From assembly GCF_021869535.1 (NCBI RefSeq), contig NW_026262668.1, positions 71,548,001-71,612,000 on the forward strand: a stretch of DNA of 64,000 nucleotides, written 5' to 3'. The translations under genes and the position numbers were made by a program. This document shows positions 2,765-48,914 of this stretch, piece after piece (the stretch's first letter is position 1; the number at the start of each line of letters is the position of its first letter). The notes beneath the pieces were generated by a model, which made no database searches, had not been told where the DNA came from, and saw nothing but the letters and a program-made list of their open reading frames with translations. This DNA comes from Mytilus californianus. Lineage: Eukaryota.

Positions 2765-5700
2765 CGTTAGGTGTGAGTGTCAGTAGGGCACCATTAGTAG
2801 GTATAGAGCTGTAAGGCTGATTCGCATCACATCGTTTTTGTGCATAACTAACTTGTACATCTCCTGACGACACACCCTGAACAGCCTTTTGTGGAAAAAA
2901 AATTAACATACATAAAGTTTTAAACGTGAAGAATGTAATTGAGTTGAAAATAACAGTTATCATTCAAATGAATTTATTATTTCAGTACATGATAATTGCA
3001 AAATAATTTATGAAAATGAAATATTTTTTTCTGGATAGATTATCGTCCTGTTAAAATGACACCCCTAGAAAAACATATAGAGAATCAATACTAGTTATAG
3101 AATGATAAATACTATGTCTTTCTATCCCTTTTTTAACGACGAAAAGACTACCAAGTCCACAAAATTCTACATAGTCTACATAGAAAACTAAATATTGAGC
3201 AACACGAACCCCACAAAAAAACCGATGGTGATCTCAAGTGTCTCTGAAAGGGAAAGCAGATCTTGCTCAATTCTGCATTTTATCTTGAACGGATACATTA
3301 TTTAGTTCTTTGGTCGTGCAGAAGCTTATTTTCTACTTCTTTGATCGTGCAGATGCTTATTTTCTATTTCTTTTTTACAATTTTTCCCCTTCTTCTCATT
3401 TCAACTGGTGTACATGAAATTGATACATGTCGTATTTAAGCTATTATAACCTTACGTACAGCGCATGTAAATCTAAAAGTTGTTAACCCATTTACACTGG
3501 TATCAAAATTATACAACGATGTGTACAGAGTGCCTGAGCCATCATCTATAGTGGCAACACAGCCAATTCTTCCTTCAGCTGCAAAAGTATATGAACATTA
3601 CTTAACATTTAATGAAAACATCTATTTAAAAGAATTGTGAATAAGGGATAGGTATGACTACAAATGAGTAAAAATCCTTTTGGCAGTTGATTATTTGCAT
3701 AAATACAGTATTTGAGTTTTTTGTTTGTTTTTGTCTTTTGGGTTTTTTTTTAACAAATATTTCACTGTAACATTTGTTTTTGTTTTGTTTGTTTGTTTTT
3801 CTTTCTTCTTTTTTGAGAAAGGGGGGTATGGTCATATAAGTAAGTTTAATAAACGTGGAGAACAAATATCAGACTTAAACTTTATTTAGATTGTAATGTC
3901 CTTTCATTCGAACGCGACTGATGAGTATTGCGTAGACGAAACGCACTTCTTGCGTATCAAACTTTAAGACTGGTATCTTCGAGAAAAAACGATAAGGAGA
4001 TCAGTAAAAGTGAGAGTTTCTACATCATGCATGATAGTTTTTCTGAATTATTGTTTTTTTACTTACACGAGTATGCAATAGACTCAACACATTTTGTATA
4101 ATCAAAATTCATCTCTTGTTGTCCAGGACAGGCAGATACAAAACTGTTTGTAGTGCACTTGTCTCCACTTCCTTCATTGAAGATGTAGGTAAAATTTCTG
4201 TGTAGAGGGTATGGACAATCGGTCAAAGCATTTTCTTCTGACCCTTTTATAATATAATTAAGGAATTAATTTCTCAAAAGTGTAGGCAACAAAAGTGTTG
4301 ATGTCAGATGCACAGTTCACACTAACGAAAGTTATAATATTAAAAACGATTACCATTATTTCCTCAGCAGAAAATAATCTATTTAAAGAGCTATGACTGT
4401 ATAAACTGGTCAAAATCAAATTTAGAACACCATCTTAATAATTGACACTTTGAGTTATGTCTCAAAACTGTTTTAAACTTTCCCATTTGTACTGAATATG
4501 AACTCATTTATCCATTTTTTTTTAATTCCACAGTTCAACCTTATCCCCCCTAACTATACATGTTCCTTTTCCCAATCCAGATGCATCGTTAGTGGTTGTC
4601 TTTAGATGTACAATGTATATTAACTACTTTTGTTTTGTTTTGTTCTTTTAATTCTTCTTTGCCTTTTTTCGATGATGGTTTTCTTTCATATAGGATAGTC
4701 GATACTGATGGCAGATCTTTGATTGATCTGTTAAATTTATACAAAACTTCTCCAGACTTTGGTCAATTTAGTGCTTAACATATAGTCTTTTGGTTAAGGT
4801 CGTATGTTGACCTCTAGACGTCTTTTTGACTTATTTGTCGTTGGGTTGCTGTCTCATTAACATAAACATAGCATCTCCTTTTATTTCTTTAATATTTCTA
4901 TTAGTTTAGGAGTACTTAGTAAATTGTAAATGATGTTTCAATATTCAATTGGTATGATATAGTAATACTTGTTGCCACGCATCACGGTGCAAAGCTTCTA
5001 TTAGTTTCAGTCGATATACACGCCATTTTGAAATTATTACCAAACAACTGTTACAACTAGTTTTGATCAGTTGCTTATTAGTGTGGCTAAGATGATATGG
5101 GCTTGGATGAGTTATAAATTGGGAATACGTCATGAAAGGGAGAAGAAATTATATACAGTCTGACAGTATGTGTATTGCTATAAGATCACATATTGTTGGA
5201 TAAGCGCTCATAGTCAAAATTTGATACATTTATTATTACCCATTTCATTTGCTTTAATCTGTATAACACGGTTAGTTTTGTTCACATTATTTCCCATGAA
5301 TGATGCGTATGGTGTTAATATCATATCATTAGTCATTACATATAATTAATAGGGTCTGGATGAGATGGGTCTTCATTTCTTTTTTCTTTAATATTTTAGA
5401 CCTATTGTCTCTATTTTTTATTTGTTTTGCCTTTTATTTTGCATGTTTTGTCCATTGTTCTCTATTCTGTAAACCACATCCAGACCCTCATAAAACAAAC
5501 GTTTTTAAGCTCTGTTCACTTATGCTTTCACTCGATGCTGACCGATATGTAATAAAAAGATATTTATTTGTTAAAATATCACATTATACAATTTAGAATG
5601 TTGGGGTCTAAATCAGCACTTTACAACAAAACAACTAACACAAAAACCACAAAAACAAAAGCTGACGTTAAGGATGTTCGCTACTCTGTTTCAAAATAAC

Positions 5701-7611
5701 AAGCTTTTTAAAAGACTGTTATAAATTGAACGTATATGAATTAAAGAACTAAAAAAGCAGGAAAAAATGAAGGGTCGGTGTGCTTGTTTTCAAGATCTAA
5801 ACCATTGAATATTTGGCGGGAAGTGATTCTCTCTAGATTTTTCATACATTTAACATTGGCACCTTTTTTCTTTTAAAAACTATGAAAATACAACAAGGAT
5901 TTTATAAGATTTTCAATACGGCTTTTTAAACTATATGTAATAAAAATATAAAAAGAAGGGGTTTGCGGGAAAAAATGTTTTAATGGCACTACATGGATAA
6001 AACCAGAGCATTCTGAATATCTTGCAAAAATTCAAAAACAAGAGGAGCGAACATTTGATACTGCGAAGCACTCCATACCTTTTCGAAAAGTTAAACTTGT
6101 AAATAATTACTATACCTATGTTAACCATGCTAATGAATTCAGCGGTAGATGGCGTTTCTGTACATAATGCTGCAGCAGGATTCCCGGGCGTTGCTGTGGC
6201 AGCATAAACAGTTATACGTTCGTTAGAAAACTGGTTATTTGTAGCTAAAATGAAAAATCAGTATAAACTAAATCAGATTTATATTTTGGCTTTTATGTAA
6301 ACATAGAGAAATCACAGATGTAATTTTAATTGTATTTAAAAAGAAATATCAGCTTTTACTTTCTAGTATTCATATGACATATTTGCAACTAGATATTAAA
6401 CAACCAAGAGTCAAAACAATATTAATGAAATGTCTTTCCTTTCTTTTTATCATTATTGCAAGATCTAGTGGTTAAATTAAGTTATTCATTTTTACTTTTG
6501 AAAAAAAGCATTGATCGGTGGATAGTTGTTTATCATCCAGTAACAAATATCACATGCATATTCAGGACAAGAAAATTTTAATTTGATATGAATATAAACT
6601 CTGCTTTGTACTAAACCCTCCAACACTTTGTCTTCGAGTCGACCAGCATTTGGTCTTATTCCTAATATCACGTGCTTGGCGAAGAAGTAGCACATACTTT
6701 ATTTTTTCAAATCTTTGGATTAACTCGACTGGAGTTCGAACCCTCAATCTCTCAAGGAGATTCAATAGTTTGATTGACGTTAAGAAAAACAACTGCAGAG
6801 TATGTTTTATCCTCCTTTTCTTATTGTCGTATTTTGATTGATCATTAATATTAGATGCATACAGAAGAACAATTTAGTTAAAGGATTACTTTGGCGAAAG
6901 TTCATACTTACGTGAGTGCATATAAAAATAATAACTGTTGGAATTTTCTGCTTGAACATTCATACAGATATAAGCGTACGATGGCGTAGAAAAAAAAGGA
7001 AAAAGTTCCGACCTGTAATTAGAAAGTAAATGTTCTAAAGCTGAACAAAATGTGCTACTTACCTTGAAAAGGAAAATTTATTGACTTAACTTTTTATATA
7101 AATATAATGTTCCGTTAAACTTTTTGACATTATAAAAATCGTTTTATTTTATTATTTCAATAAGAACTCGCCAGCTGGCTTTATCAGCTGAAGTGTTTTA
7201 TTTTATTATTTCAATAAGAGCTCGCCAGCTGGCTTTATCAGCTGAAGCGTTTTATTTTATTATTTCAATAAATGCTCGCCAGCTGGCTTTATCATCTGAA
7301 GCGTTTTATTTTATTATTTCAATAAGAGCTCGCCAGCTGGCTTGATCAGATGAAGCGTTTTATTTTATTATTTCAATAAGAGCTCGCCAGCTGGCTTTAT
7401 CAGCTGAAGCGTTTTACTTTGTATTATACTTACTGCAATATAATATATGGAGATGTAGCATCATTAAAACATGTCCAGTCGGTAGACGATTGACTATTTA
7501 TCTGGAAAGCATGTTCTCCCAAAGTTAGTGTAGTACTGGTTATGGTGATTGTTCCAAATGCATTACTATTCCATGTACCAATGAGACCACTGTCAAATGT
7601 ACATCCGTTTA
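2765..7611 (-). CDS. Paralog P1, Cys-rich ectodomain membrane-protein family, partial. Exons 7611-7434, 7012-6912, 6244-6116, 4243-4067, 3578-3460, 2885-2765; downstream exons not found in window
   Basis: Six AG/GT-bounded exons splice in frame (phases 1,2,1,1,1,0,1): VNGCTFDSGLIGTWNS...WTCF...AYICM...LCTETPSTAEFISMV...DCPYPLHRNFTY...GRIGCVA...RFTCAAVQ...LLTLTPN. They align exon-for-exon with P2 and P3. Confidence 0.88.
3911..3955 (+). ncRNA. Degenerate hammerhead motif, subfamily i. Further decayed copies at 25790-25833(-), 38486-38535(+), 46985-47030(+), 49997-50042(-)
   Basis: CTGATGA-gta[ttgcgta]gac-GAAA-cgcact-TC; the other copies keep gtc-ttaYgta-gac and/or cgcgcg but carry core substitutions. 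Confidence 0.55.
7141..7416. repeat. 54-bp minisatellite, 5 copies, in P1 intron 2
   Basis: Unit gttttattttattatttcaataagagctcgccagctggctttatcagctgaagc. Confidence 0.95.
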
Positions 7612-9409: not shown

Positions 9410-9473
9410 ATACTGTAAGGATCAACTGTACAAAGTTTAAGAAAATGCTATACCTTTTATTTTCTAACCCCAT
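9410..9473 (-). CDS. Tentative first coding (signal peptide) exon of P1, MGLENKRYSIFLNFVQLILTV
   Basis: ATG plus a hydrophobic run. The phase-1 donor GTACAT at 9409 fits exon 2, but a stronger GTATGT donor 4 nt earlier is phase 0. A CACCTGGTG motif lies upstream, as for P2/P3. Confidence 0.35.
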
Positions 9474-10559
9474 ATCACCTTAAGGTAATTTTGTTGTGAT
9501 GGCAGATCTTTTATCTTATTTGTCTCTGTTAAACTTATTTACCACTTTTCCAAACAGGAATATTTAGATTTATAGATTGACACCAGGTGCTGTCTATTGT
9601 TGAAAACTATATCTTGAATTCAAAATTAATTTATTTAGGTTTTTTTTTTGTGTTGTTGAGATGATGCGTATTTAGTGAACTTTTCTTTCAATGCAGTTAT
9701 GGAATGGCATAAACCTGTTTAACGTTGGACTGTTCTTTCCTTTCTTTGTTGATTGTTTTGTTATACTTTGATTTAAGGAACAGTTTATTTTGCAGCTTTT
9801 GGGAAACTTTGTATTACACAAAAAAAGTTAATTTGTATTTTAATTTTCAAATATCTTCTGTTTGTTTAATATTCCACTCGTAGTTGATTAAATTATGCAT
9901 CTTATCTATAAAACAAGTCTATTAATTAAATACTATACCTACCGGTGGTTGAAAAGACAACAACATACAGTATCGTATGAGATAAACAATTCTTCATTTT
10001 TTGTCCACCATAATTTCCCTTCGGTAAAGATTAGATTTTTCTATTGTTTTAAGGTAAATGGACTGATTAACGACGAAACAAAAGAATTATGTTTTAGCTT
10101 TTACCCCGAGTAAATGAGCAGGAACAATAAACATATGTTACAAATTAAATCGGTTTATCAAATGTCAATAATTAATTAGATCACCGTTAAATAAATATGG
10201 AAGGCACTTTCTTTGTTGAATTAAAATAGAGATCCTTATCAGTAAATACGTTTAGTAATCATGACGTGTCCAATTTGATTTTGAATATCCAATAATGCTA
10301 TCACTAATAGAAACTTATATATATATAAAATTGAAAAATAAGATACGCAATGACACAAAAACAACACGATAATAACTATTAGCACCTTCAACCGGCCTTT
10401 CGGCTCTACAGATAATTACTTATAGTATGTGGCAACGTATGATACTAAAATAGTTATTAACGGGTCCAGCAAAAATGCGACCGATTAATCACGAGGATGA
10501 TATTAAAAAAATTGCAAAGTGTTAAAGGGTCAGGCATATAATCGTATTCAACAGATCAA

Positions 10560-12412
10560 ATATATGGCGAATAGAACGATAACCCTTTGGGAACTTTGAA
10601 ACAGCGACATAGACAGACATAATCATCACAAAAAATGGAATAAAAAAAATTACTATTAGCACTAAACCCACATAAAGCAGCAGGCCCAGACAACTTAACA
10701 CCTAGAGTACTAAAAGAGATGGCATTACAAGTAACACCAATCCTAACAATGATATATAGAAGATCATATGAAACTGAAATAGTACCATCGATATTGAAAA
10801 CAGCAAATGTAAGCCCAGTTTTTAAGAAAGGCAAACGATTTAAATCCATCAGTTATAGACCTGTATCTCTTACCTGCATCTGCTGCAAAATCATGGAGTA
10901 TATAGTCACCTGCCACTTGAATCGTGCAGATAAGAATAACATCCTCTACAAAATGCAGCATGGATTTAGAAAACAATTGTCACGCGAGACACAACTAGTG
11001 GAGTTCATTGACGACATCACAAAGAACCTTGACAATGGACAACAAACAGACTGCCTCATCATAGATTTCTCGAAGGCCTTCGACAAAGTAAGCCACAGTC
11101 TCTTAATCCATAAACTTGATGATTATGGAATCAAAGGAAAAACAAATGCTTGAATAAAAGGTTTTCTTTCTGACAGAACACAGCGCGTTGTCATGGAAGG
11201 GGAGAAGTCTGACATCATAAATGTAGAGTCCGGGGTCACGCAGGGATCAATACTGGGACCAAGCCTCTTCCTTTTCTACACAATGACATGCCGGACAACA
11301 TTTCATTAACGGTGAGGCTATTTGCAGATGACACCATTGCATACCTCACTGTCTCATCAGAAAGCAAAAGTCTACAAAGGACCTGAACAACCTAGCCACG
11401 TGGGTAGAAAAATGGATGATGCAGTTCCATCTCGATAAATGTGTAGTTTTGCCAATCACCAAAAAGAAGGAACCAATACTCAAAAAATACATTCTCCATG
11501 GACACAACTTAGAACATGTATCATTAGCCAAATAGCTGGGAGTCACCATAACATCTGATCTATGAAAAGGTGATCATATAAACAACATCTGTCAAAAAGC
11601 TAACAGGACAATAGGATTCCTTAAACGAAACTTAAATATAGCAAACAGTGAGATCAAGGAAAAAGCATATACAGCTTTACTAAGACGGACAGTTGAATAT
11701 GCAAGTTCGGTATGGGATCCTCACCTACAAAAAGACAAGCATAAACTAGAAATGATACAAAGAAATTTAGCAAGGTACGTAACAAACATGTACCACAACA
11801 CATCATCAGTTGAATCTATGCTACAAAAACTACAATGGCCAACACTAGAATGGAGAAGAAAGAACGCTAGACTCACCCTCTTATACAAAATTTCAAATGA
11901 GGAAGTAAAGATTGATGCTGGCGACAAACTGACACCACCAGATAGATTATCAAGACATACCAAAATTCACTCTTTCCATATACCATCTTGCAAGACTAGC
12001 ATCAGGAAAGAATCTTTCTACCAAAGACCGATAAGAGATTGGAGCATCTTACCTGTCTCGGTGACCGCGGCAGAAAGTCTTGACTCGTTCAAGAGATTAC
12101 TGCATGCATATTAAATTTCAATTTACCATGTATAAATGTTATGTACAGCACAAATCTCATTTTTCTTTTCTGTTAAAATTATTTTGGACTTGTAAGTATG
12201 CAAAAAAGTAAAATAACAAAAATATCGAACTCCGAGGAAAATTCAAAACGGAAACTCCCTAATCAAATGGCAAAAACAAAAGCTCAAACACACCAAAAGA
12301 ATGGATAACAACTGTCATATTCCTGACTTGGTACAGGCGGGCACACCAAACAGTGACAGGAAAGTCAATCTAATGACGGTGGTCACTTAGTGGTAGAAGT
12401 AGAAGTAGAAGA
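10560..12412 (+). mobile_element. 5'-truncated, decayed CR1/L2-group non-LTR retrotransposon (RT pseudogene plus 3' UTR)
   Basis: LNPHKAAGPD, YRPVSLT, QHGFR, DFSKAFDKV, GVTQGSILGP, LFADD, EYASSVWDPH and RRKNARLTLLYKI motifs across frames; stops (e.g. 11151) and frameshifts; (TAGAAG)n-like tail at 12394-12412. Confidence 0.93.
12202..12338 (-). repeat. Dispersed repeat inserted in the LINE 3' UTR; same family at 32618-32800(-) and 44925-45097(+)
   Basis: Shared aaagtaaaataacaaaaat...ggaaaattcaaaacggaaa...caactgtcatattcctgacttggtacaggc. Confidence 0.8.
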
Positions 12413-14689: not shown

Positions 14690-17600
14690 TTATCGCCACG
14701 GCCTCACATAACTCTTCTGTTTTGTTTCAAGGTGAGGAAGTTTAATTTGCTCATCATTTTTCTGTTGTTCATTATTGCCAACTTCTGAGTGCGTCGTTAT
14801 ACTTGGAAGTTTAGTAGCACAGTACGATCTTTGTCTATCTAGTGATGACTCATCGGCAGATATGCCAGAATCTACAATTTAAAACATTTTCACATTCATA
14901 CTACACAAAGGAGTAAAACAATAACCTTTTTACCATTTTCCAGTTGAGTTTGTAATGTAAGTGTAATACTTCGTTCAAATGTCATGATTTTTGGTACTGG
15001 CAAGAAAATAAGGATATTGTTCTATTTTTGTTATATAATTTCGAATAATTTAAGGAATGTATCTCCCACATGCATAGCTATGATTCCTCGTCTTTAACGT
15101 TGGTCTTTTTTTTTATCTGCTCTTTAACATTTGTATTATGTTTTGGATTTCAAATATTCTGGCCTCGAGCATCGCTGAAGAGACATTTTAAATTGCAATA
15201 CATTTGGTACCGTTAATGTTTTTACTACCACTGCGTCGATACCTGTGCGGTGAACTGTTAGTTCCCGAGGATATCACTGCGTCGATACCTGTGCGGTGAA
15301 CTGTAAGTTCCCGAGGATATCACTAACCCAGTAGTCAGTACTTCGGTACTGGGATAAAAATACGGATATTGTTCTACTTAAATTTGCTGTTATAAAATTT
15401 TGAAATCATTTTAAATTAAGGAATGAATATCCTCATGCATAGCTCTGGTTCCTTGTCCTTGATTGGATTTTCCATTGGTCCTGTTTGGTTTTATCTGCTC
15501 TTCTACGTTTGTATAAGGTTTTGGACTTCATATATTTAGGCTTTGATCATCACTGAAGAGACATGAATTTTCGAAATGTGCATCTGATGCAATAAAATTG
15601 TTATTTTTTTCAACGAAAATATATACTTTTTTTAAACCAACAACTTATTAATTAGTATTCAACCAATTAGTCTATAAGTTGATATCAATCTATAGAAACA
15701 GAAATAAATCAATGAAATTTACTTTTTTCCTCCAAAGATTACCTTGAAAATCTGTCGCAGAGGATTTCATTCTATGTAAAAAGTCAGTTGTAGCTGGTAT
15801 AAGCTCAGCGTCTTCTTGTTTTCTGACAAATGTTTCGGATTTCATTCCAAGGTTTGGGGAAGGCTGATATTTTTCTTGAAATATAACAAGATAGTTGAGG
15901 ATAAAATAACACAAATGTGAATATAAAAGTGGACTGATTATTGATGGCTTATAAATCATCTCATCAGATATAAATAATTCCTATATTATATCCTTATTTG
16001 AATAAAGTAATTAAATCCATATGTCAGTGATGTTATATCTAGCAATAAGCCTGTATCTCAAATTTCAAGACAACACAGGTATTTCTGGTCAGTGGTGCAA
16101 AAAACATATATTGTAAATCCGAAATGACAAAGGTTTGGAAACAAAAAGGGCAATTTTTTTTTCTATGCAATTTCAAGCAGAATTGATACCATCACACAAT
16201 TCTTCTATTGTCTCAAACGTGTTTTTTTTTTCATTGACAGATACCTCAAAAGTTACTTTTGTAATATCATCACATACTACTTTAAAACGATAAAAGAAGA
16301 CCATAACAACCAATAACACAGGCTCAATGATTGATGAATTTGGTATGATTTTCTAAACGAAAACGCAGGTCTTTGACGTGTTATACAATGCCTGTTTTTT
16401 AAAATTGATGAATGTATTTGAATTCATTCCTGTATTTACTCATCATAATGAATAAATAGAGATAATTGGGAAAGACAAAAACCCATATAACCAAAAAAGG
16501 CCAATAAACATTCCTTTTAATGGTTAAAACAGAAAAGCATTTCAATCGTAGTAAATTCAATGTGTTTCTCTATGGCCTAGGCATACGCATATTCGTGTAG
16601 CGGGATTATACTAGCAATACGAGTTTACACGTACTTATTACCATGTAAACAACATTATGAGTGTCTGGTCTTGTTAAAAGTAAACGAACTAAAAATATAT
16701 CAAAAAGGAATTATCGGATGTTAACGCTTGTTGTTCTACACTGGTCCGCCACTGGGGGCGACCGGTATGGTAACATGATTGCATACTTTGTTAAAACGTT
16801 ACTAGTACATGAAAAAAATCTGCGAATTTTCTTTCAGATACAAATCAATTTCTGTTGTTTATGGATCATAAAAACAATACATGTGTTTGAATAAATTGAG
16901 TACAACGCACATTACTTTACAGAATGCAGTCTAAGATAAAGTATAATGTATTTCTACAACATCATTAACCCGAGTTGGATAAGGAATGTACATTTTGCAC
17001 TCTTTGTAGTGGTACATCAATTAGAACGTAGGACAGAAAGTCACAGGAAAAATATATAACGAGAAAAAGACACAATTTTGTATTTTGATATTTTTTTGTA
17101 TTTGATAAAGTCAAACATTTAAGTCTGACCAGTGCTAAGCTTACACCAATTATCAAAATTATCAAAACTGACATAAGAAGAATATGAATATTCTCCATAG
17201 GCCCTTCATGGTATTGCTATCTCTGCCACGTTTTATATATTTAGTTTCCACGTTTGGATCTTAATCAAACCAGGCGAACCTTATTCTAGAAACACGTATC
17301 ATGCACATTGAAATAGTTTTTTTTATGTAAAAGCATTAAAGATCATTAAATTAGTGTAATGTCATCCATTAATATTGAAATAAATTCATATCACAAAAAA
17401 CAACCCAAACGAAATTTTTAGCATCTATGGTGGATCTTATACTGTATCATATCAACAGTAATTATCAGTTATCATGAATAATAATACCTGGCGTGTTATC
17501 ATTTTCTGTTGTTGTCGACTTGTTTGACGGACTTCCAGTGTTAAAGTTCGCATTAGTCTTTGATTTTCGCTTCTTGTTTGAGTCAACAGGTTTAACTTTA

Positions 17601-36111: not shown

Positions 36112-36120
36112 CACCTGGTG
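36112..36120. promoter_or_regulatory. Palindromic CACCWGGTG (E-box-containing) site in the P2/P3 divergent intergenic region; identical 9-mer at 9581-9589 upstream of P1
   Basis: Only two occurrences noticed in the window, each near the 5' end of family members. Confidence 0.35.
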
Positions 36121-36774: not shown

Positions 36775-39700
36775 ATGTTACATGTTATTTTAATCTTTGG
36801 AGTATTTCTGATGGATCAAGATGTTGGTACATGACGTAAAACTGCTTTATGGCCTGTTCCTATTAATTCGTCAAAGTTGTAAGTATTTGTGTGTGTGTGT
36901 GTGTGTGTGTGTGTAGTTTCATAATAAATATGAGCCGTTTCACATACTTCGTTTGCCGATACAACTCATATTTATGTCGCATCAAATCAAATAATCACAA
37001 GATTGACACATCAACATATTGATGGCACCAGAAAAACTATAACTTCTTAAGCAACATCAGTGATACAGACAAAAAGCTCCCTTAACAACTAAAAAAACAA
37101 TGAAAGTTATGGTTCCTGTTATAGTTGCACAGTATTCAAGAATAATAAATATTCAAAAATAAGAAGATGTTGATTGATTTCCAATTAGACAACTACCCAC
37201 CAGAGACCAAAATAAGCAACTATAGGTCACCAAAAGGCCTTCAACAATGAGCAAAACTCATACCATACGGTATAATCAGCTAAAAAAGACTCAACATAAA
37301 AAAAGTGAAACAACCAAAAGATAACCGAAAAAACAAATATGACAGACCGCAACAAACAACAATACCCATGCAACTATTTCTATACAAAAATCTGCTTTAA
37401 TATTTATTTGAAAAATCTTTTCCATGTTTTCCTCTCATTAAATTTCCGAGTTCAGATGAACCATTATCAAACATTTCATTTGAAGTATCTCGCTCGGCGG
37501 AAGACACCTTACTTTACCTTTTCATGGTTTTTTAAGGTGGGCTATGTACTTATCCAAGTGACTTACGAGGAACATGGTACGACAGTGTTTATGGGACTAT
37601 CGGCTTTACAGATTCTTCTATGAACATGCAGACGAAAGCATTCGTTACGGGTTTCACCAATACAAACTTTACTTGTCAAATAAATAATGGAGATCTGTAT
37701 GTATCAAAGTAAGTAAAATAGATAAAACAGTACATGTATGAAAAGTAATATTCATTTTGTAGTTCTTTTATAATTGTTATTGATCTATTATTTTTTATTG
37801 TTGTTGCGTATCAAAAAACTCCTTTTCAAACAGAACATAAAAAGCGAGAGAAAAATTAAAACTAACTATATGTATTATAATTTTTTATACATATAGGTAA
37901 CACAGTTTTGAATAATCCAAAAAACTGTATTTTTATCATTAAGTATTGAGTCAGTATAAACATCTGGCATACAAAGTTATAAGCCTGGTATCTTTGATGA
38001 GGTTTTAATAAGTGCTATTACCTTTATGGGATATTTTGTACGACTTTATTTTTTTTTTTTTTTGTTACAAATGAATTTTATTTTGAAGAGTATGACCATT
38101 TCATTGGTGCATCTAACCAAACACAAAAACCCTTCAAAAGATATATAGACATCAAAACACGGTCTTCAACAATACAATGAATGTATATTGTTTGTCTATA
38201 AATAAAAGAGATATATATCCTATAAATGCTTCTTTGTTTGAATTTTTTCAGAAGTGTTGAGGCTGTCACGCTAGGTATTCTGGGTGGTTTTACTGTTAAT
38301 GTATGGATATGTTTTGAAATAAAATCATTAACGACTTCATCATTCTATTATTACCTCAGATCAAGTAAGTGTTTTTTTTCTCCAATTGATATAAGAATAA
38401 AGTTCGTTTTTTGTCACCGTTTTAGGCATTATCTGTTTTAATGCTCTGCAACTCATTTGATTAGGCCTTCTTAATGTTTTGATTCGAGTGCCACTAATGT
38501 GTCTTACGTAGACTAAACGTAAACTTATCTCGCGTACCAATTATAAATCTGCTATCTATGTATTTTCCGTGTATATTTTTTTAAGTTGAAAAGACATGCT
38601 CGTTAACAGTACATATAGATTAAGTCTTTGACAATATATTTCAGAGGATCAAGACAATTTGAATTTTGGCGATGTAGTCCCCGTTGCAACAACGGTTTCG
38701 ACTGTAACAGAAGCAGATGTATGTAATACGTCGCCAGGAGTCGGTGAATTCCATATGATAGTAAATCCTGGTGAGTTGTTTAGATTGACTGATATAAAAC
38801 ATGAGTTATTTAGATTGACTGATATAAAACATTTTCAAGCCTTTTCAATTTCATAAAATTGCATATGCGTCGCGGTAACCGAGGTCAAATATTTTCAATT
38901 GCATTGAAAATATGAATAAAATACTATTTTGAACGGTCATTACACCAAATCAGTATATTTCTATGTTTTCGGGATTATTTCGACCGAAACCCCGGCTAGG
39001 CACGCCATTTCTCTTTACTAGATATTCACACAAAAAAAAACAAAAAAAAAAAAACCAAGAGACTCGTTCTAAATCTTATGTTCTACTGATCTCCTTAAAA
39101 ATTAAAACAACACGTTCGAAAACGATTTTCTGTGTTTACCTTCATAAAAAACGTTCACGTCCAAAAATTTGAAAGCCAATGATGTATAGCTACCCAAACA
39201 CGTGAAGAGCTATATGATCAAGAGGGACATTAAGAATAATAAAATCCATCTAACTTTATCATTAAGCTGTGATTAATATTTGATTACTTTGTATAAATGA
39301 CAAAGAAAACCAGAAAAGCAGACTGCTACAGTAATAGTTTATAGGAACTCCAAACAAGTCATATAAAACAATCTGGTTTAAGTACATGATTATTGTAAGC
39401 CTAAAATGGTACAAATGTCTGCGTTTTCTTGTAACACTATTCAATTAATATATTATACAGCTTCGTCAAAAGAAGGATTAAGTGCTGTTCCTGTACCTTT
39501 GCTTGGTGATTTTACCTATTCCATGAACTTTGGAACCGATTCATCGCAATGTGGAGCATCTGCTTTCTGGGAAAGTTGTTCTAATACAACTATTATCACT
39601 CTAAATAATACTGCCTGTGGAAGTCAGTTCGTTGGATATTCAGGTAAATGTATATAGTAGATATATATGTTTCGTACTAATATTCAATAATGTTTAAATG

Positions 39701-42700
39701 GGTTTTAAACATTAAAAAAACGGTCAGTTTTCAATGAAAACAATGTCTTACAGGAGCAACACGACGGGTGCCACATGTGGAGCAGGATCTACTTATCCTT
39801 CAGGAGCACCTAAGATCACCCCCAGTGTTTGGTGGGGTTCGTGTTGCTCAGTCTTTATTTTTCTATGTTTTGTGTATTGTTGTTTGTCTATTTGTCTTTT
39901 TCTTTTTTAGCCATGACGTTGTCAGTTTATTTTCGACATATGAGTTTGGATGTCCCTTTGGTATCTTTCGCCTCTCTTTTACAATGAAGAATGTCTCCAG
40001 TGCACTGATGGAATATCTTCCTTTTTGTCTTTTCAGATTGACGAGGTTGCGCATAAGGAATTTGTAAATTCGTTTTTCAACTGAAACATTTTAAACACTC
40101 ACATTTGTGGTAACCAAAGATAGTTCCGTCCTATTTTCCTCCTATAACATAAGTTATTGGAGAGTATGGCCTGACCCATCGAAAGTTTAATTTAGCATAA
40201 GAGACACGATAAATGTCACTTGTGCTTTCCATTCTCAGCATCTGATTTTTTTAGTGAGATTCGTGTTTCTCAGGCTATAATTTTGAATATTGATTTTATA
40301 TATGTCTTTTTTAAGTATGGACATGGTATTGTCTGTTTTTCGTCCCGTGATAACTTCTTATTGTTTTGCACCAGATCATTTTTGTAAAGTACTTTTAGTT
40401 TTTTAGTTTAATTCACAATAATCCAAAGTATGATACATTTGAAATGCATCTTTGAAATATTTTTACAAAAGATAGATCATAGCAGCTAACAGACGGAATA
40501 TGTAAAATACTTCAATTGGCCGTGATAAAAAAAAATAAAAACCGAACTTAACGCGTGAAGAATACGTGTATCTAAATAAAAAAACACATATTGTGATCAA
40601 TTAGAGACAACAGTTGTTTACCGATGGATAAATCGCCTAAATACATTTAGAACATACAAATCAAGGGGAGGGGGTCAAAGGCTTAAGAAGTCGAATAAAC
40701 TCCAAACGGAGCACGATCTGGTGGATTGACATGATAAGCGTCGTCTGATGTACAATGTACGTGCATACCTCGCCAGGCGAATCCAAACTCGATCGTCCCA
40801 TGTCAGCACTGAATATATGATGCAAACGTATGAAAACGCCAGGATTTATTATATTGACCTTACAAATATAGCAAATCAACTGATTTTTAACAGGGATGTT
40901 CTTAAAAATGTAAACTCTATTTAGATAGTTTAAAAAATAAAGATACACAATTTTAGCAAATTCAGCGCTATCACGCAATGATTCAATTACGTATGAAATA
41001 CATACAAGTATCACTATGAAATCTAAGTCACACATGTAAATTACCAATTTGGTAAAATTTGTTTCTTTTATTTAAGCAAAGTTTTTTCATTCTTTTTACT
41101 TGTATAATAGATAGTTTATAGGTGTGATGTCATTTCTTATGCAGTTTCTTGTTGAGCTTAAATCTTGTCTACTACTGACTATCATAAACACACATTATTA
41201 ACCTGGACAAGCAACTATGCAAAAGCGCACAATTTCTTGGGTTTTTAGCGGAAACCTATTACCCTAAGTACCAAAACAAATGATAAAAAAAAACACAACA
41301 TAAATTCAAATTCATCACACAGTTACATATAATAAATGAATTATTTATTATTACATTCCAGCTTCTGGATCATTAGGTTGTATCATATCAGTGCAAGATA
41401 CAACAAGTACCAGTGTTTACTACGTAGGGGTTTACAACTTTGATTCTACGGTCAATGGAGCGTCAACAAAGCGATTTACGTGTTTCGTGAGTAAAACAGA
41501 CATTCTTATGTTACATTCTGTTTTTGTTTATTTTGGCTATCATATTATTGCTTTACATGAAGTGAATCGAGGGTTAATACAGAATCGCTCGCATGTGCAC
41601 CTACATATACGCATCTTCTGGTAAGACTTAAAACAGAGACTTTATGTTGTAATTGTGTTTATGTAGTCGCATGCCTAATAGAGATCATAAATTGGCCTAT
41701 CAAAGATCGAGTATTCACAACCCCCTCCCTCCCACAAAAAAAACCGGCGCTAATTGCCGTCTTAAACTTGCAGTAAGGGAAAAGATTTTTGCTCCTTTTT
41801 GAAGACCTCACTGTGACTTTAAGATGAAGAACAGCAATAAAAGCGCTGTTCCTTTGCTTTTTGTGTTTTTTGCTGTGCACATACTGATTTTGTGTCATAA
41901 ATAATTATATCCTCCTGACATTAAAGTCAGGATACTCCAGCTCGTTTCAAATTTTAACATACCAAAATGCTTTCCCAATCAATGATATACATATGATAAC
42001 AGGAATTACTAAAATGTTAGACGTACAACAAACTACACCAACCACTAACAACCGACTCCACCAAGAAAATAGATGTACAAACAAAGACAAACATAAACAA
42101 ATAACATATGGTCCTAACTTTGTACAGACACTAAATAATGTTAAACCAGTTGTGCATGCGTATCTATATAGACAATATGTTGTAAAAGAAAATACAAAAT
42201 AGAAAACCTGAACAGTCCAGCTACCAACCGGATGAGTATAAACACTTATTTGCATATTTGAGCCTTGTTATTTACTTATAACTTCATTTACGCGTTGAAA
42301 ATTGACTGATGGAAAATTAAGTCAAATTATGTGCCAGTTATAGTATATGTAGTTAAACTTTAATAGCTCATAAGGGTGCTCAATCAGTTCGGTATTTTTG
42401 TTATACTTTTTCCCTCGCTCCTCCAGTTCTATTAATATTACTTATTAGACCTTTAATTATTACTTGGTGTTCAATAATTGAATGGAGAATCATGGATTTT
42501 TAAAGAATTTTCCAAAGGTGAGCATTTGAACATTTTCGCTGACAATTCTGTAATGGAGAGAGCGATTGCCAACAATTATATTCGAAATGCGAACAGGATT
42601 CTTAATAATGTGAGGTCTTGAAATTCTTTTTATATTATTTTTAGACGGTGGAATATGATACAAATATTACAATGGTCAGTCAAAGTCCAAATAAATGTTC

Positions 42701-45700
42701 ATCAGGTTCCAGTCCCACGGTTCTGCCTACAGATGGTGCTCTTCTTCAACTCACAACTGTCAGTAAGTTGGTAAAAATACAAGTATATTGATTTCAAAAG
42801 ATTCAATATATTGTTTTTCCCTTAAGTTTCATTTTTAATTTTAACGCAGCATAAAATTAAATAAAAAAATGTCAAAAATTGTCATTTTTGAAATATGGTA
42901 TGTTTGAAGAATGTATCATATTCAGAAAATCAAAGATGACTGTTTGATACGTTATGCCTCGTAACTTTTAGTCAGTATCACCAACGAATAGATAGGGTAA
43001 ATATTGCTTTATGCATAGGTCGGAAGGATAAAATAAGGGAATATGAAAAGAAATTAAATTTAAAGGAAAAACTATTTGTTATTAACAGAACAAAAGAATA
43101 GACCTGAAAGGGACTTGGTTCAGCGAGTGTCAGTGATATAAACATTGATTTCTGCAACAATAGTTTGATTCAAAATTTTATATATTACGCTATTGTTTCT
43201 GTTACGATTGTTGGCTTACATTCCGCCGATATATTACATTTAGTATAATTGAATATCCAACTTTTCTTGGGCTCCTACTTTTGTTTTTACAGTTCGGGGT
43301 GTACTGTTTAATTTACTTGTACAGGAAAAACGAGAGTAGCAGTTGTACCCTTATATCATTCAAATATTGTTGTACTTAGTTATGATCTGATGAGTTATGT
43401 TTTTATTCTAATTAACAACATGTACATTACAATCATATTTACCCCCATCAAACAGATAAACGTGGTGTACAGTGATTGCTATTGTATTCTTGTTATTTTT
43501 TATTGGGTTTATGTAATTGACTTGGTTGTCTCTTTTTGAAATTTTAACATTTGGTTTTCTGGGGAAGCTTCATAGCTAAAATTACGATATCCATTATTGA
43601 AAGCCATTGTGTTAATGGTCACCTTTTTGGGTTTGATGGATAGTTGTCTCTGTTGTTATTGCACCGCATCTTTTATACATATAACACTCACATTGTAACA
43701 TGAAGACCGGGAGATTGCCACTTGTTAAAAAATCATTTTTGTCGGCTAAACACTCCAGGGGTAAACAAAAACACTTGTCGGCTCTGAGTAAAATATTGTT
43801 TTCTAACCTGGCACGTTAAAGATACTGTTAGCATTTTATTATTGTACACATTAGGGCTAATGCTGATACAAAATTGATATGTGTTTGGCATAAATATGTA
43901 AACTACCGTACTCGACGTCAACATGCACCAATCTTATCGTGCTTTTTTAATAATACTAGTAAATGAAATGTTTCCTGGTAGCGAATAGGATGCTGAAGCA
44001 TGTGATTTTGAATAAATAATTCAGTATCATTGTATAAAAAATAAGTTAATTTGAGGCAACTAAACGTTACAAAAACTACATAAGCGTCCTTACAAACATC
44101 TTTATATTGCTGTGTCTCCAATACACAAAACCTCTTTCCAAATTATTTTATCAGATTTCAAAGCCTAGTTTGAGAGTTACTATTAAGTTTTCTACCTAAA
44201 GTGAGGTTTGAATCAGATGCAGATACTAAAAGAATCAAAAGATATGTTAGAGTGCATACACTCTAAGTCCTTTTGCAAAAGTATATCATAATACATTTGA
44301 CTTCTCTATCCTTTTCACTAATATTCCTCTTTCTAAACTTAAAGACAGATTGTTATAATTAGTTCAACTTTGTTTCATAAAATAGAATTTTCAATGTATA
44401 TAAAAATATTTTATTTTAGGACGGAATAAGTCATACTTTGTGAAAAGCCACTTTCATTTTAAACAAAAATTCTTTGAAACTGACATTTACAAGATGTTTG
44501 ATTTTTTTTGTAATGACGACACTCTGTACTTATGTATCCCGTCATACTTTGAACGACAAAATTATTTTATTTTATTAATATTACTTTTACTGTTAAGTCT
44601 GTTTTTTGTGATATCCATTTGACGTGACTCTGTACTTATGTATCCCGTCATACTTTGAACGACAAATTTATTTTATATCTACCTGTGTGACGTCAAACGC
44701 GCGATTCTACGCCAGATCTTAAAACCTTCCATCCTTTGTGGGTGGATTTTACATAGATAAATAAAATCGTATAATAAATAAGCAATATGAGGATGTTAAA
44801 TTTGTTTTATGCATTTTTGTGCTACTTTGTTACATTTGTTTGTTTTATAGTGATTAAGATGATAACACAATGTTGACTGCTGTACCCCTATTTTTGACAT
44901 TTTTACCTATTGTGTCTGTTATAAAACCAGGTTAAATCCACCATTTTCTACATAAGAAAATGCCTGTACCAAGTCAGGAATATGACAATTGTTATCTATT
45001 CGTTCGATGTGTTTGAGCTTTTGATTTTGCCATTTGATTAAGGATTTTCCTTTTTGAATTTTACTCGGAGTTTAGTATTTTTGTGATTTTACTTTTTGTT
45101 ACGTTTTGAGGACCTGTTTTTCAACAGACAATCGGTGTTTCTGTAGGAACCAACTGTTCATATCTTCTTGCCGACTTGTTCTTTTAATTCATACGAGGTA
45201 GACTTTATACAGAACCTTCCCAGTGACATTTCAGCAGCGCCTGCATATGGAGAAAATATCTCCCAGTTGATACGATACTACAGAGCTTGTGTTTCCTTCA
45301 TGATTTTCCTTGATTGCTGGTTACTGCTTACAATGAATCTATTGAATTAAAGATGCTTAGTGGTAAAGTTGATGCCATCCCATCGAAAGGTTTATAGACA
45401 TCATCATGATTTAGTTAACAATTATGAAATATCCGTGTCACAGATGACCACTGATATGTTCTGATTGTCGTAGCTAAATCCCGTTCCTATTTCCAAGATT
45501 ATAACATCACAAAATGAGACCTATCACAAAATGTGTACTTACCACGAGAAACACGACGATGCCACTAGAGGAGCAGGATCTGTTTACCCTTCCGGGCACC
45601 CGAGATTACCCAGATTTTGTTAATAGTTTTATTGTTTACTTTTTTTTTGTCATTGTTTTGTTGGTCTCTCTTCGACTTATGAGTTTTTATTGTCTCCTTG

Positions 45701-48700
45701 GTATCTTCCAACATGAACATATTTACATAGTAACCAGGGAGGATATTAGGACTTTACAAAAACAATTCGAAGGTATAGTTTTATAATGAAGTAATATTTG
45801 TAAAGGCAATATAAAAATCCTTATGGACTGTGATTCCTGTTTCTTTATATAATTAACACACAGAAATGCATAGCATTAATAGTAATTAATGAGTAGTAAC
45901 ACCATTATTGTGCTCCTATGTTTGATTTAACATTATTGCTGTCATAAACCATTACAATTTAAAACTTGCCATAAAGTAATTATCAAGAATATAATATGCA
46001 CCAGACATGTCTTTTACTTGAAAGATTAGTAACGAACTTGAAATTGTGTGTATATTTTAGGCAAAAACAACGTATATACTATCATGCAGCTGGTGAATAT
46101 ATCTGGTTTTTGGTAATGCATGCTATTGAATGTGTTGAAAACATTTCGTTTCATTAATCATGTTAATTAATGTTTTTTTTAAATTTAATTATACACTATT
46201 TTCAGCATCCTGTGGTGAGTATCACCTTGTTTTAAATTCTTTGTACACCTGATTGATTACTTTACAGAAACAGCAATATATCAATCAACCGGTCCCAACT
46301 GGTCAATTCAATGAAATTTTCTCAAGAGTTATATTTTTGTCAATTAATTGCTATGTATTGAAATCAATGATACAGTAGTCGTTATCTTAAATACTCTCTA
46401 GTTCTATCGTACCAGTTCAAAATTCAACATTAGAATTTTCTTAATACCAGTATCATTGATCAAATTAAAATACTAGTTGAACTGACAACTTGATTGGTTA
46501 ATATCTGATGGTGTATTAGATTTGTAAACAAAAACAAATGTGTTAAATAATGATCTGTCAAATTACTTTAGCTTTTACAAAAGTACCGAGTCAGTACTAC
46601 AATATTGGCTAACCATTTGTTCTAGCTGATTATCTTTTATAAATATCTTGATATCAATGCTTGCTATGACTTTGGAGTTAATTTTGCACCGACCTTGGAC
46701 TTAAACCCATTATTATTTGCTATTCTATGTTCTATATAATTGATAAAAAAACAAACTTTAGTCGGTGAAATTTTTTCATCGATATCTATGGAAATCTTCA
46801 CTTTGTATGTGTATTACATATATCTTAATTGTCTACAAAATGTTAAATTATTCGCAAACTTAGGTTTTTCAGCCCCCAGGTATAGATTATCTTAGCTTTA
46901 TTTGGCACAAATGTCTTGACTTTTCGGTTTTTAATGCTCTTTGTTTACTTCGTATTTGACTTGGACCTCCAACTGTTTTGATTCGAGCAGCACTGACGAG
47001 TCTTATGTAGACAATACGCGCGGATAGCGTACAAAATTATAAACATGGTATCTTTGACGAGATTCTTAAATTACAAATCAGCCGAACATCAGTTTAACAT
47101 CTCTATTTTCAGCACCAGTATCCCCGCCAGATGATCCTCTGTCAATTGCAGAAATATTTGCAATAGTTTTCTCTCTTATGTTGGTCATATTTCTGGCTCT
47201 ACTAATTGGTATATGCCTTTATAGAAGATATATTAAAAAGCACACAAAGAAAATCATTATAAGTAAGTATAGACAAATTTCCATGTTCTTGTCAAACAGC
47301 TGATTGTAAATTGCACTAACTATATTACACACAGCAGTGGTTTACTGATGTTCAAATCTCATAAATGCATTAAGTAGATACTAATCAAGGTAAAAAGAAC
47401 AAAGACTTGGGGAATCCCTTGAACCCTAAAAGAAGCGAGACAGGGAAAGCGTCCCCTGTCATGCATGCATCTACCGCCATGTGAGTCTACTATAATATTT
47501 GATTTTTCAAAAAAAATCAACAGTAATAAACTTTCTATGTAATCAGCAAAAGCTATTAACCATATGCCACTAATTGTGATAAGTAATCAGTAGAAGTATG
47601 ACGAAGATGACTACAGGAACTGTAACTGTCGGCATTATTTCATTAGTTTTCATGAGTAGAAAAGTACACAAGCTAATATGAAAAAAGATTAAGAAAAATT
47701 CTGAAGACAATACAAAATTAAGATAACAATATCTGAACACAGACAAATTTCTGAAGACCATACAAACCAAAGATAACAATATTTTAAATCAGAATTGGGT
47801 GCGATCTTGGATTCGATTCTCGTTTTATATCTATATTTGGTATTATATGTTATTAAAAAATTGAAAGCAATAAGACAAAACCAATAGTTTGTTATCATTT
47901 TGTGATAAATGCACTTGTTATAAACATTTTATCTTATTTAATATTTAGTCATGAATCTGATTTTTTGCCATCGAACAGATCTTTTTCATATATAAATATG
48001 ATCTAAATCAAATACAAAAATGTTAAGAAAGTCTTCTCTTAGATTAAAGAGAGAGAATAAGTCCAAAAAATGTATTAATAGATGAATATTATTTTTTATT
48101 TTTTTTAGTTCCAAAAACCCTTCCTAGAGGAGCCCATACTGTATTTACTTTGTCAGACACCAATACCATGGTAAACAAGGAAATAATAACAGAGCCTAAA
48201 CTTGTTGTGAAACCAATCAGAAATGGGCAACCACAGAGCATGGAACTTCAACAATGGAAACACAACGCCGAGTTTCAAGAACCAGAAGGACAGCTTAGAT
48301 TAGTAACTAAACCTCAACCCCCTATAGCGACAATAGACACAATGAAAAGTCGAGTCGCAACACAGATGCGCGAAGATACTGAACGGAAACGCAACATGGC
48401 GCTCGTTATCGACAGAGTGAAAACTAACTTAGATAGAGAATTGCGTGTAATAGCAGTATTAAAAGCTAAGGATGCTGCGAATAAAGAGGCATATAGTAGA
48501 GAAGCAGCAGCCAGTAAAATGAGCCAGGCAGTATCAATTTTTCCACCTAAAAGTAGAATGGGTCAATATGTTCATGACCCTCAAGCAAAAAGTCGAACAA
48601 TGAGCATGCGCAAAAATAAAATCACAAATGGGACAATTAAAACAGCAGTGCATGACAATAGTTTTAACAATTCTTTTAATTATGATCCTAGAACTTCAAC

Positions 48701-48914
48701 ACCATTATCGATTCAGAGACCTTCTAGTATTGATATGGTTATGTCTGAAGCAAATTTATCAGTTTTTTCAGTTGATTTGAAACACAGAGCTTCCAAGACC
48801 CCAAGACCTCAACCAGATATAACGGTGACTAAAAAAGTTAGGGATACAAAGAAATTCCCAACAATTAAAGAACTAAGTAATATGCCAGGAGAATTTCAAA
48901 ACTTTGAACGGTGA
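36775..48914 (+). CDS. Paralog P3, type I membrane protein, 617 aa. Exons 36775-36826, 37537-37708, 38252-38364, 38645-38770, 39461-39643, 41362-41486, 42645-42762, 46206-46214, 47113-47262, 48109-48914
   Basis: GT-AG introns, same phase series as P2 through the TM exon, exon 4 and 5 lengths identical to P2 (126, 183 nt), summed CDS 1854 nt. Signal peptide MLHVILIFGVFLMDQDVGG, CTYPSDLRGTW motif, TM IAEIFAIVFSLMLVIFLALLIGICLY followed by RRYIKK. The last exon includes the 254-aa track ORF. Confidence 0.87.
36889..36914. repeat. (GT)13 microsatellite in P3 intron 1
   Basis: Direct reading. Confidence 0.97.
45103..45712 (+). mobile_element. Penelope-like element remnant with internal deletion
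   Basis: FQQTIGVSVGTNCSYLLADLF (GIPMG motif) joined to SDISAAPAYGENISQLIRYYRAC, then the decayed ORF end and 3' UTR. Confidence 0.8.
46206..46214 (+). CDS. 9-nt microexon of P3 (CATCCTGTG, T-S-C)
   Basis: ctattttcag|CATCCTGTG|gtgagt; phase 1-1; Cys codon at the same position as in P2. Confidence 0.78.

What the first reader, a model, noticed from the sequence alone, without database searches (positions are those of the whole stretch)
2765..48914. Hidden three-gene cluster of uncharacterised receptor-like proteins with a shared ectodomain and gene-specific tails
No track ORF reveals this family, but small exons splice into three paralogs with the same phase series. They share a C-x-[FY]-x5-G-[ST]-W N-terminal module and a second module (P-x-P-L-x-x-x-F-T-Y ... 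C ... C ... C ... G-C ... RFTC). The Cys/aromatic spacing recalls the uncharacterised DUF7044/DUF7042 domains (recalled pattern, not a search result). P1 and P2 are clearly closer to each other than to P3. A locally expanded, divergent ectodomain coupled to unrelated signalling tails is the layout expected of a diversified recognition or adhesion receptor family.
Basis: partly seen in the sequence, partly recalled or inferred. Interest (0 to 1): 0.82.

Follow-up and report, generated by a model that had tools for sequence, protein, structure and literature searches.

The report
Mussel membrane proteins with double-barrel ectodomain
Three neighbouring mussel genes encode single-pass membrane proteins whose outer part is two lipocalin-like beta-barrels of an uncharacterised mollusc family (DUF7042); the genes are real and partly unannotated here, but they belong to a family already catalogued.

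Summary
Three paralogous multi-exon genes lie in the window: P1 and P2 on the minus strand, P3 on the plus strand. All share the same exon order and the same intron phases.

Pfam places the second module in DUF7042.

Database proteins show the genome is Mytilus californianus. Its RefSeq models for P1 and P2 hold only the stalk, membrane segment and tail, so the ectodomain exons are unannotated here. Gene models from M. coruscus, M. galloprovincialis and M. edulis confirm every P1 and P3 ectodomain junction.

An AlphaFold model of the P1 orthologue's ectodomain (pLDDT 91.9) shows two eight-stranded lipocalin-like barrels. A stalk, one membrane helix and a disordered tail follow.

- The P1 and P2 tails are homologous (35% identity, E 2e-56). 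Only the P3 tail differs.
- The duplicates are old and conserved (91-94% identity to other Mytilus species), not rapidly diversifying.
- The family is mollusc-wide and has at least 19 copies in this genome.

Function is unknown. A hydrophobic-ligand receptor role, as in APCDD1, is inference only. The scan had only read this same stretch once before, not other DNA.

The parts
9943..9997 (-). P1 signal-peptide exon (18 codons plus 1 base)
   Evidence: 100% match to residues 1-18 of the M. coruscus orthologue P0001; phase-1 donor
7434..7611 (-). P1 e1, start of barrel 1 (C-x-F-x5-G-T-W)
   Evidence: 55/58 identical to P0001
6912..7012 (-). P1 e2
   Evidence: split codon Q matches P0001
6116..6244 (-). 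P1 e3, end of barrel 1
4067..4243 (-). P1 e4, first half of DUF7042 (barrel 2)
   Evidence: Pfam PF23069, 29 bits, E 1.1e-6, profile positions 3-50
3460..3578 (-). P1 e5, DUF7042 continued, ends in RFTC-A
   Evidence: Pfam DUF7042 profile positions 53-89, E 0.01; junction ...AYS-S-EGRIGC identical in P0001
2765..2885 (-). P1 e6, end of barrel 2. The next exons (stalk/TM, mid exon, tail, two more) lie outside the window in L003 and L004
   Evidence: P0121 and P0122 map to window coordinates -1178 to -14317
35436..35496 (-). P2 candidate signal-peptide exon
   Evidence: ATG in a good context, hydrophobic core, phase-1 GTAAGT donor, C-terminal end resembles the P3 signal exon; no orthologue model available, so inferred
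34262..34442 (-). P2 e1
   Evidence: 33/56 identical to P1 e1
32899..32999 (-). P2 e2
32069..32194 (-). P2 e3
30428..30610 (-). P2 e4 (DUF7042 first half)
   Evidence: 36/58 identical to P1 e4
29529..29650 (-). P2 e5
   Evidence: 31/38 identical to P1 e5
28926..29049 (-). P2 e6
26012..26284 (-). P2 exon with Thr-rich stalk, membrane helix and basic stop-transfer
   Evidence: Hydrophobicity scan; phases; RefSeq P0124 residues 1-61 are 100% identical; sub-threshold Pfam hits to mucin-stalk/TM families; helix pLDDT 86-90
23444..23551 (-). P2 acidic mid exon (cytoplasmic)
   Evidence: P0124; 35/35 identical
17488..18777 (-). P2 large tail exon, disordered, homologous to the P1 tail
   Evidence: 429/429 identical to P0124; P1 tail 35% identity, E 2e-56; pLDDT below 50
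15743..15874 (-). P2 exon 11
   Evidence: P0124 residues 528-571 100% identical; splice sites
14690..14871 (-). P2 last exon with stop
   Evidence: P0124 residues 572-631 100% identical
36821..36878 (+). P3 signal-peptide exon
   Evidence: 15/19 identical to M. edulis P0137; GTAAGT phase-1 donor
37537..37708 (+). P3 e1
   Evidence: 49/56 identical to P0137 and to P0002; weak DUF7043 match, E 0.087
38252..38364 (+). P3 e2
   Evidence: HMM of P1/P2 e2; 35/37 identical to P0137
38645..38770 (+). P3 e3
39461..39643 (+). P3 e4 (DUF7042 first half; the first Cys is replaced by Val)
41362..41486 (+). P3 e5
42645..42762 (+). P3 e6
   Evidence: HMM of P1/P2 e6; 38/39 identical to P0137
47113..47262 (+). 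P3 exon with short Pro-rich stalk, membrane helix and basic stop-transfer. The acceptor is uncertain: the M. edulis model P0137 carries three more residues at this junction
   Evidence: P0131 and P0137 map here
48109..48914 (+). P3 tail exon with stop, unrelated to the P1/P2 tails
   Evidence: Junction 47262 to 48109 is used by M. galloprovincialis RefSeq P0131, 247/267 identical; no similarity to the P1/P2 tails

Best explanation
The window holds three old paralogues of a mollusc multigene family of single-pass (type I) membrane proteins. Each protein has five parts. First comes a signal peptide. Second comes an ectodomain of two disulfide-rich, eight-stranded lipocalin-like beta-barrels: barrel 1 is a divergent DUF7043/DUF7044 module starting C-x-F-x5-G-[ST]-W, and barrel 2 is Pfam DUF7042 ending in RFTC. 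Third comes a stalk, Thr-rich and mucin-like in P1 and P2, short and Pro-rich in P3. Fourth comes one membrane helix with a basic stop-transfer. Fifth comes a long, intrinsically disordered cytoplasmic tail carrying short conserved motifs. Shown here: the exons, their phases, the paralogy, the family membership, the fold class, the membrane helix, the disorder of the tail, and the truncated RefSeq models. Inferred, about 30% likely: the barrels hold a hydrophobic or lipid-modified ligand at the cell surface, as lipocalins and the two-barrel membrane protein APCDD1 do, and the conserved tail motifs recruit cytoplasmic partners.
For: Motifs and paralogous exons. Identical phase series and canonical splice sites. 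Pfam DUF7042: 29 bits on P1 e4 alone; 57, 54 and 36 bits on orthologues P0121, P0001 and P0002; 32 of 33 family members hit DUF7042, 9 hit DUF7043 and 6 hit DUF7044. Independent gene models reproduce every P1 and P3 ectodomain junction, and they join the ectodomain to the TM exon and tail: P0001, P0121, P0002, P0137. AlphaFold model of P0001:19-300 (94% identical to P1): pLDDT 91.9, pTM 0.89. Both of its domains align to lipocalin/calycin-type barrels at Z 5.4-8.8, including APCDD1 at Z 6.1-6.5. TM-score is 0.90 to a mollusc DUF7042 cluster and 0.67-0.68 to DUF7042/7043/7044 clusters. Membrane helices. About 24 of 35 longer family hits carry one TM segment 50-80 residues after the RFTC motif. 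The tail is disordered, mean pLDDT 41.5. APCDD1 as a two-barrel, membrane-anchored lipid binder: PMC10193966.
Against: There is no transcript evidence from this species. RefSeq models for P1 and P2 here (P0122, P0124), and for P2 and P3 in M. galloprovincialis (P0125, P0131), all start inside the stalk/TM exon and omit the ectodomain. P0001 skips the TM exon, and P0002 ends after e6. The P2 ectodomain has no independent gene model. Fold matches of Z 6-9 are in the range the tool calls a common arrangement, so they show a fold class and not a function. No pocket analysis was possible. Each ectodomain has 11 Cys, an odd number, which is unexplained.
Confidence: 0.8

Rival explanations
1. The ectodomain exons and the TM/tail exons are separate transcription units or alternative isoforms. 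One product would be a secreted double-barrel protein. The other would be a separate membrane-anchored tail protein made from an internal promoter.
For: Four RefSeq models in two species start inside the TM exon (P0122, P0124, P0125, P0131). P0002 ends just after e6, and P0001 skips the TM exon.
Against: The e6 donor (phase 1) fits the TM-exon acceptor in all three genes. P0121, P0123 and P0137 join the two parts. Most relatives in oysters, scallops, abalone and other mussels, RefSeq models among them, have barrels, stalk, TM and tail in one protein. A TM/tail product alone would have no signal peptide. Starting at an internal Met is typical of 5'-incomplete models.
Confidence: 0.12
2. This is the reader's view: a rapidly diversifying recognition or adhesion receptor family, whose ectodomain binds variable protein or glycan targets rather than a small hydrophobic ligand.
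For: The family is large and clustered: 82 exon-level matches on six of the genome's contigs, including at least 19 e4-type exons. Mucin-like stalks and variable tails are present.
Against: P1 and P3 have clear orthologues at 91-94% identity in three other Mytilus species. The ectodomain is no more diverged than the tail. Between P1 and P2, pS is saturated at 0.75 while pN is 0.23, which indicates old duplicates under purifying selection. The fold is a closed barrel of the ligand-carrier type.
Confidence: 0.2
3. The ectodomain exons are decaying relics that are no longer expressed, and only the TM/tail genes are functional.
For: The RefSeq models of this genome lack them.
Against: All 18 ectodomain exons are open and have canonical splice sites. 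The Cys pattern is conserved: a 33-sequence family alignment has 3 invariant and 5 nearly invariant Cys columns. Identity to orthologues is 91-94%, and pN is far below pS.
Confidence: 0.04

Closest known systems
Pfam DUF7042 (PF23069) proteins with DUF7043/DUF7044 (PF23070/PF23071); UniProt 'DUF7042 domain-containing protein', e.g. M. coruscus CAC5376044.1 and M. galloprovincialis VDI57007.1
   Same: The second module scores above the Pfam cut-off. The two-domain unit superposes on ESM Atlas clusters of these families at TM-score 0.67-0.90. CAC5376044.1 is the P1 orthologue (94% ectodomain identity) and VDI57007.1 is the P3 orthologue.
   Different: The N-terminal module falls below the DUF7043/7044 cut-offs in P1 and P3. 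The canonical intronless members of this genome (L001, L002) have two DUF7043-DUF7042 units and no long tail, whereas P1-P3 have one unit plus stalk, TM and a long tail.
APCDD1 (WNT inhibitor; PDB 8e0p, 8e0r; PMC10193966)
   Same: Both are single-pass membrane proteins whose ectodomain is two disulfide-bonded, lipocalin-like beta-barrels. Barrel 2 aligns to an APCDD1 barrel at Z 6.1-6.5 over 116-122 residues.
   Different: No sequence relationship was detected. The profile search of PDB sequences gave nothing at E up to 10, and no APCDDC Pfam hit appeared at E up to 0.1. The Z values are within the background range for barrels. APCDD1 has a short tail.
Lipocalin/calycin superfamily (lipocalins, avidins, fatty-acid-binding proteins, bacterial lipocalin-like proteins)
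   Same: Both have an eight-stranded up-and-down barrel. A G-x-W motif sits on the first strand. VIA-align matches include Tp0751, Bacteroides lipocalin-like proteins, tear lipocalin and others at Z 5.4-8.6.
   Different: These proteins have two barrels in tandem, are Cys-rich and are membrane-anchored. No lipocalin Pfam hit was found, and ligand binding is untested.

Membership tests
Pfam DUF7042 (PF23069) | HMM score at or above the gathering cut-off of 27 bits | tested here: met
   P1 exon e4 alone scores 29 bits, and e5 continues the profile. Orthologues P0121, P0001 and P0002 score 57, 54 and 36 bits. The genome search places the P1 e4 exon at 27.6 bits.
Pfam DUF7043 / DUF7044 (PF23070 / PF23071) | HMM score at or above 27 bits on the N-terminal module | tested here: inconclusive
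   P3 e1 gives E 0.087. P0001 scores 15 bits. Of 33 family members, 9 hit DUF7043 (best E 3.2e-6) and 6 hit DUF7044. Structure gives TM-score 0.67-0.68 to DUF7042/7043/7044 clusters.
Lipocalin/calycin fold | Eight-stranded antiparallel up-and-down beta-barrel | tested here: met
   Model with pLDDT 91.9. Both domains (residues 7-138 and 145-279) align to lipocalin-like barrels at Z up to 8.8, rmsd about 3 A, about 100 residues aligned. This is fold class only and does not show homology.
Lipocalin/calycin fold | Ligand pocket inside the barrel | not testable with these tools
APCDD1 family (Pfam APCDDC) | Sequence match to the APCDDC domain or to APCDD1 chains | tested here: not met
   No APCDDC hit among the families matched at E up to 0.1. 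No PDB sequence matched at E up to 10.
Type I single-pass membrane protein | N-terminal signal peptide and one membrane helix followed by basic residues | tested here: met
   Signal exons. TM exons by hydrophobicity. Sub-threshold hits to glycophorin, endomucin and EGFR-TM families. Helix pLDDT 86-90. A dedicated signal-peptide or topology predictor was not available.

The most novel reading that the evidence does not exclude
These proteins could be an invertebrate counterpart of APCDD1: membrane-anchored double-lipocalin receptors that capture lipid-modified signals such as WNTs, or other hydrophobic cues, at the cell surface. On this reading the family has expanded in molluscs, and interchangeable disordered tails route the signal differently in each paralogue.
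Probability: 0.1. Interest if true: 0.65.

Novelty: new member of a known kind. Interest (0 to 1): 0.3.

Why it matters
The practical value is annotation. In the Mytilus californianus reference, the P1 and P2 genes are annotated only as tail fragments, and one carries a misleading name ('rho GTPase-activating protein gacO-like'). The exon maps given here restore about 290 residues of ectodomain to each.

There is also a biological lead. DUF7042/7043/7044 proteins are a sizeable mollusc and arthropod family with no literature: a full-text search found no paper naming any of the three. The confident two-barrel, lipocalin-like model gives a first testable idea for them, namely surface binding of hydrophobic ligands. 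None of this overturns anything known.

Tried and rejected
**Spliced proteins not assembled.** Exons were searched one by one by reference. Orthologous database proteins (P0001, P0121, P0002, P0137) stood in for the spliced models in the Pfam scans and the fold prediction.

**Searches that gave nothing useful.**
- Literature search for DUF7042, DUF7043 or DUF7044: 0 papers.
- Foldseek of the whole two-domain model against the PDB: nothing at E up to 1e-3.
- Profile search of PDB sequences: 0 hits.
- The look-up of encoding contigs for P0122: no record, because the window's own genome is left out of that tool.
- ESM Atlas look-alikes for the P2 and P3 tails: nothing usable.
- Pfam on the tails and on P0122: no family.

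**dN/dS.** It could not be computed for P1-P2 or P2-P3 because synonymous sites are saturated.

**The 9-nt cysteine microexon.** I found no need for it. Orthologue models join e4 directly to e5. The TGT that reads as Cys after e4 spans the T|GT donor itself.

**Repeats ruled out as exons.** Similar pieces at 2.3-2.7 kb, 27.6-27.8 kb, 23.3-24.2 kb, 37.1-37.3 kb and 54.9-55.3 kb are a dispersed repeat, not exons.
Full report
**What is in the sequence**

It also finds the P-x-P-L...F-T-Y motif exactly three times. Each of these is followed by an RFTC motif, in three co-linear loci. Two loci are on the minus strand (P1, about 7.6-2.7 kb; P2, about 34.4-28.9 kb). One is on the plus strand (P3, 37.5-42.8 kb).

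Stop-to-stop pieces of the three loci match each other at blastp E 1e-12 to 1e-29 for P1 against P2, and more weakly for P3. Small HMMs built from the P1 and P2 exons found the two P3 exons that were still missing.

**Gene models**

I placed exon borders where the paralogues agree in position, dinucleotide and phase. All three genes have a signal-peptide exon followed by six ectodomain exons, e1 to e6. The intron phases are 1, 2, 1, 1, 1, 0, and then phase 1 into the next exon.

That next exon encodes a stalk, a strongly hydrophobic segment of about 23 residues, and a basic stop-transfer:
- In P2 it is 26284-26012 and has a Thr-rich stalk.
- In P3 it is 47113-47262 and has a short Pro-rich stalk.
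- In P1 it lies outside the window, in L003.

The tails follow:
- P2: an acidic mid exon (23551-23444), the large tail exon (18777-17488) and two more exons, ending at 14690.
- P3: a single exon, 48109-48914.
- P1: a mid exon, a large tail exon and two more exons, between window coordinates -6.7 and -14.3 kb.

The finding's borders, 2765 and 48914, are the P1 e6 donor and the P3 stop codon.

**A rule I followed**

I did not build or search any joined, spliced protein. Exons were searched one at a time by reference. Natural database proteins that turned out to be orthologues served as stand-ins.

**Independent support for the models**

A profile of the three e4 exons (alignment A1) was searched against the 1.84-billion-protein library. 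It gave 114 hits. Every hit I looked up is from a mollusc: Mytilus, Crassostrea, Saccostrea, Mizuhopecten, Pecten, Tegillarca, Potamilus, Sinanodonta, Haliotis and Nucella.

The most useful hits and follow-ups were these:
- P0001 (M. coruscus CAC5376044.1, 'DUF7042 domain-containing protein') is the P1 orthologue. It reproduces the signal exon and every ectodomain junction, including the split codons V, Q, P, G and S.
- P0121 (M. galloprovincialis) carries the whole P1 architecture: e1-e6, stalk/TM, mid exon, tail and two more exons.
- P0002 (M. galloprovincialis) and P0137 (M. edulis) do the same for the P3 ectodomain. P0137 also joins the signal exon, e1-e6, part of the TM exon and the tail.
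- P0131 (M. galloprovincialis RefSeq) uses the P3 junction 47262 to 48109.
- Ectodomain identity to these orthologues is 91-94%, about the same as for the tails.

**Which genome, and what 'hidden' means**

P0122 (LOC127728069) and P0124 ('rho GTPase-activating protein gacO-like') are Mytilus californianus RefSeq proteins. They sit on a contig of 140,809,528 bases, which is exactly the length of the window's contig C88. They map to it at 98-100% identity per exon. The genome is therefore M. californianus.

Both models begin at a Met inside, or just upstream of, the stalk/TM exon and contain no ectodomain. The M. galloprovincialis RefSeq models for P2 and P3 (P0125, P0131) are truncated in the same way. 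This keeps a rival reading alive: separate units or isoforms.

Three things argue against that rival:
- The phases fit in all three genes.
- Three non-RefSeq models (P0121, P0123, P0137) join the two parts.
- About 24 of 35 longer relatives, RefSeq models from other molluscs among them, have exactly one TM segment 50-80 residues after the RFTC motif.

**What family it is**

P1 exon e4 alone passes the Pfam DUF7042 cut-off (29 bits), and e5 continues the same profile. The orthologues score 36-57 bits.

The N-terminal module is below cut-off for DUF7043 and DUF7044 in P1 and P3. However, 9 of 33 family members hit DUF7043 and 6 of 33 hit DUF7044. Two intronless genes of the same genome (L001, L002) show the canonical DUF7043-DUF7042 order, twice over.

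The family is large in this genome. There are 82 exon-level matches, including at least 19 e4-type exons, in clusters on six of the genome's contigs.

**Fold**

An AlphaFold model of P0001:19-300, built with a 33-sequence family alignment, is confident (pLDDT 91.9, pTM 0.89). It is all-beta and has two domains.

Foldseek on the whole model found nothing significant. The exhaustive VIA-align search aligned both domains to eight-stranded lipocalin/calycin-type barrels:
- The top matches were Z 8.8 (3rby) and Z 8.6 (Tp0751).
- Many lipocalin-like proteins matched at Z 5.4-7.1.
- Mouse APCDD1 matched at Z 6.1-6.5 over 116-122 residues.

These Z values establish a fold class and no more. The ESM Atlas search gave TM-score 0.90 to a mollusc DUF7042 cluster and 0.67-0.68 to arthropod and mollusc DUF7042/7043/7044 clusters.

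[quoted passage not shown] The present family has the same gross layout. It shows no detectable sequence relation to APCDD1.

**Tails**

The P1 and P2 tails are homologous (35% identity, E 2e-56), with conserved islands. The P3 tail matches neither. None of the tails has a Pfam family or an Atlas look-alike.

A model of the P2 stalk/TM/tail protein, built with 9 sequences, is confident only for the membrane helix. Elsewhere pLDDT is mostly below 50, which fits intrinsic disorder with short motifs. The shallow alignment limits this conclusion.

**Age and constraint**

Between the paralogues, synonymous sites are saturated (pS 0.68-0.79). pN is 0.23 for P1-P2 and 0.45-0.48 for comparisons with P3.

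Orthologues of P1, P3 and the P2 tail exist in other Mytilus species. The duplications therefore predate the genus radiation, and the copies are under purifying selection. This does not fit a rapidly diversifying recognition family.

**Mechanism**

Shown here: a type I membrane protein with a double lipocalin-like barrel ectodomain and a disordered tail.

Inferred, roughly 30% likely: a barrel binds a hydrophobic or lipid-modified ligand at the cell surface, and the conserved tail motifs recruit partners.

Left unexplained: each ectodomain has 11 Cys, an odd number. P3 has lost the first DUF7042 Cys but gained one next to the signal-peptide junction.

**Verdict**

The genes are new members of a catalogued but uncharacterised family. 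The main practical result is a corrected annotation, plus a structural lead.

Noticed in passing
window 10719-12114 (+): Fragments of a reverse-transcriptase ORF lie between P1 and P2 (Pfam RVT_1, 48.8 bits on 10719-11153). This is probably a decayed non-LTR retroelement.
   Followed up: partly
window 60992-61270 (+): A short ORF ends a double-stranded-RNA-binding motif (dsrm, E 0.009, below cut-off). From memory its sequence resembles the first dsRBD of RNA helicase A (DHX9), so a helicase gene may start near 60 kb.
   Followed up: partly
window 19957-21411: A near-perfect tandem duplication with a period of about 682 bases (95-100% identical translated pieces) sits inside the P2 intron between the mid exon and the tail exon.
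   Followed up: no
window 286-943, 2329-2718, 23314-24159, 27558-27806, 37149-37272, 54929-55296: Copies of one short dispersed repeat occur in both orientations. Several lie in introns or flanks of P1-P3 and could be mistaken for conserved exons.
   Followed up: partly
window 35436-36878: P2 and P3 are head to head. Their first coding exons are only about 1.3 kb apart, which suggests a shared bidirectional promoter.
   Followed up: no
L001 1027-3135 (-) and L002 819-2882 (-), contig C154: Two intronless ORFs of about 690-700 aa carry two DUF7043-DUF7042 units, a Cys-rich linker and a hydrophobic C-terminus. This is a different branch of the family in the same genome.
   Followed up: partly
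RefSeq protein P0124 (maps to window 26195-14693): The name 'rho GTPase-activating protein gacO-like' given to the P2 tail model has no domain support here. The name is not mirrored by any Pfam family: its P1 counterpart P0122 has none, and the P2 stalk/TM exon gave only sub-threshold mucin-stalk hits.
   Followed up: partly
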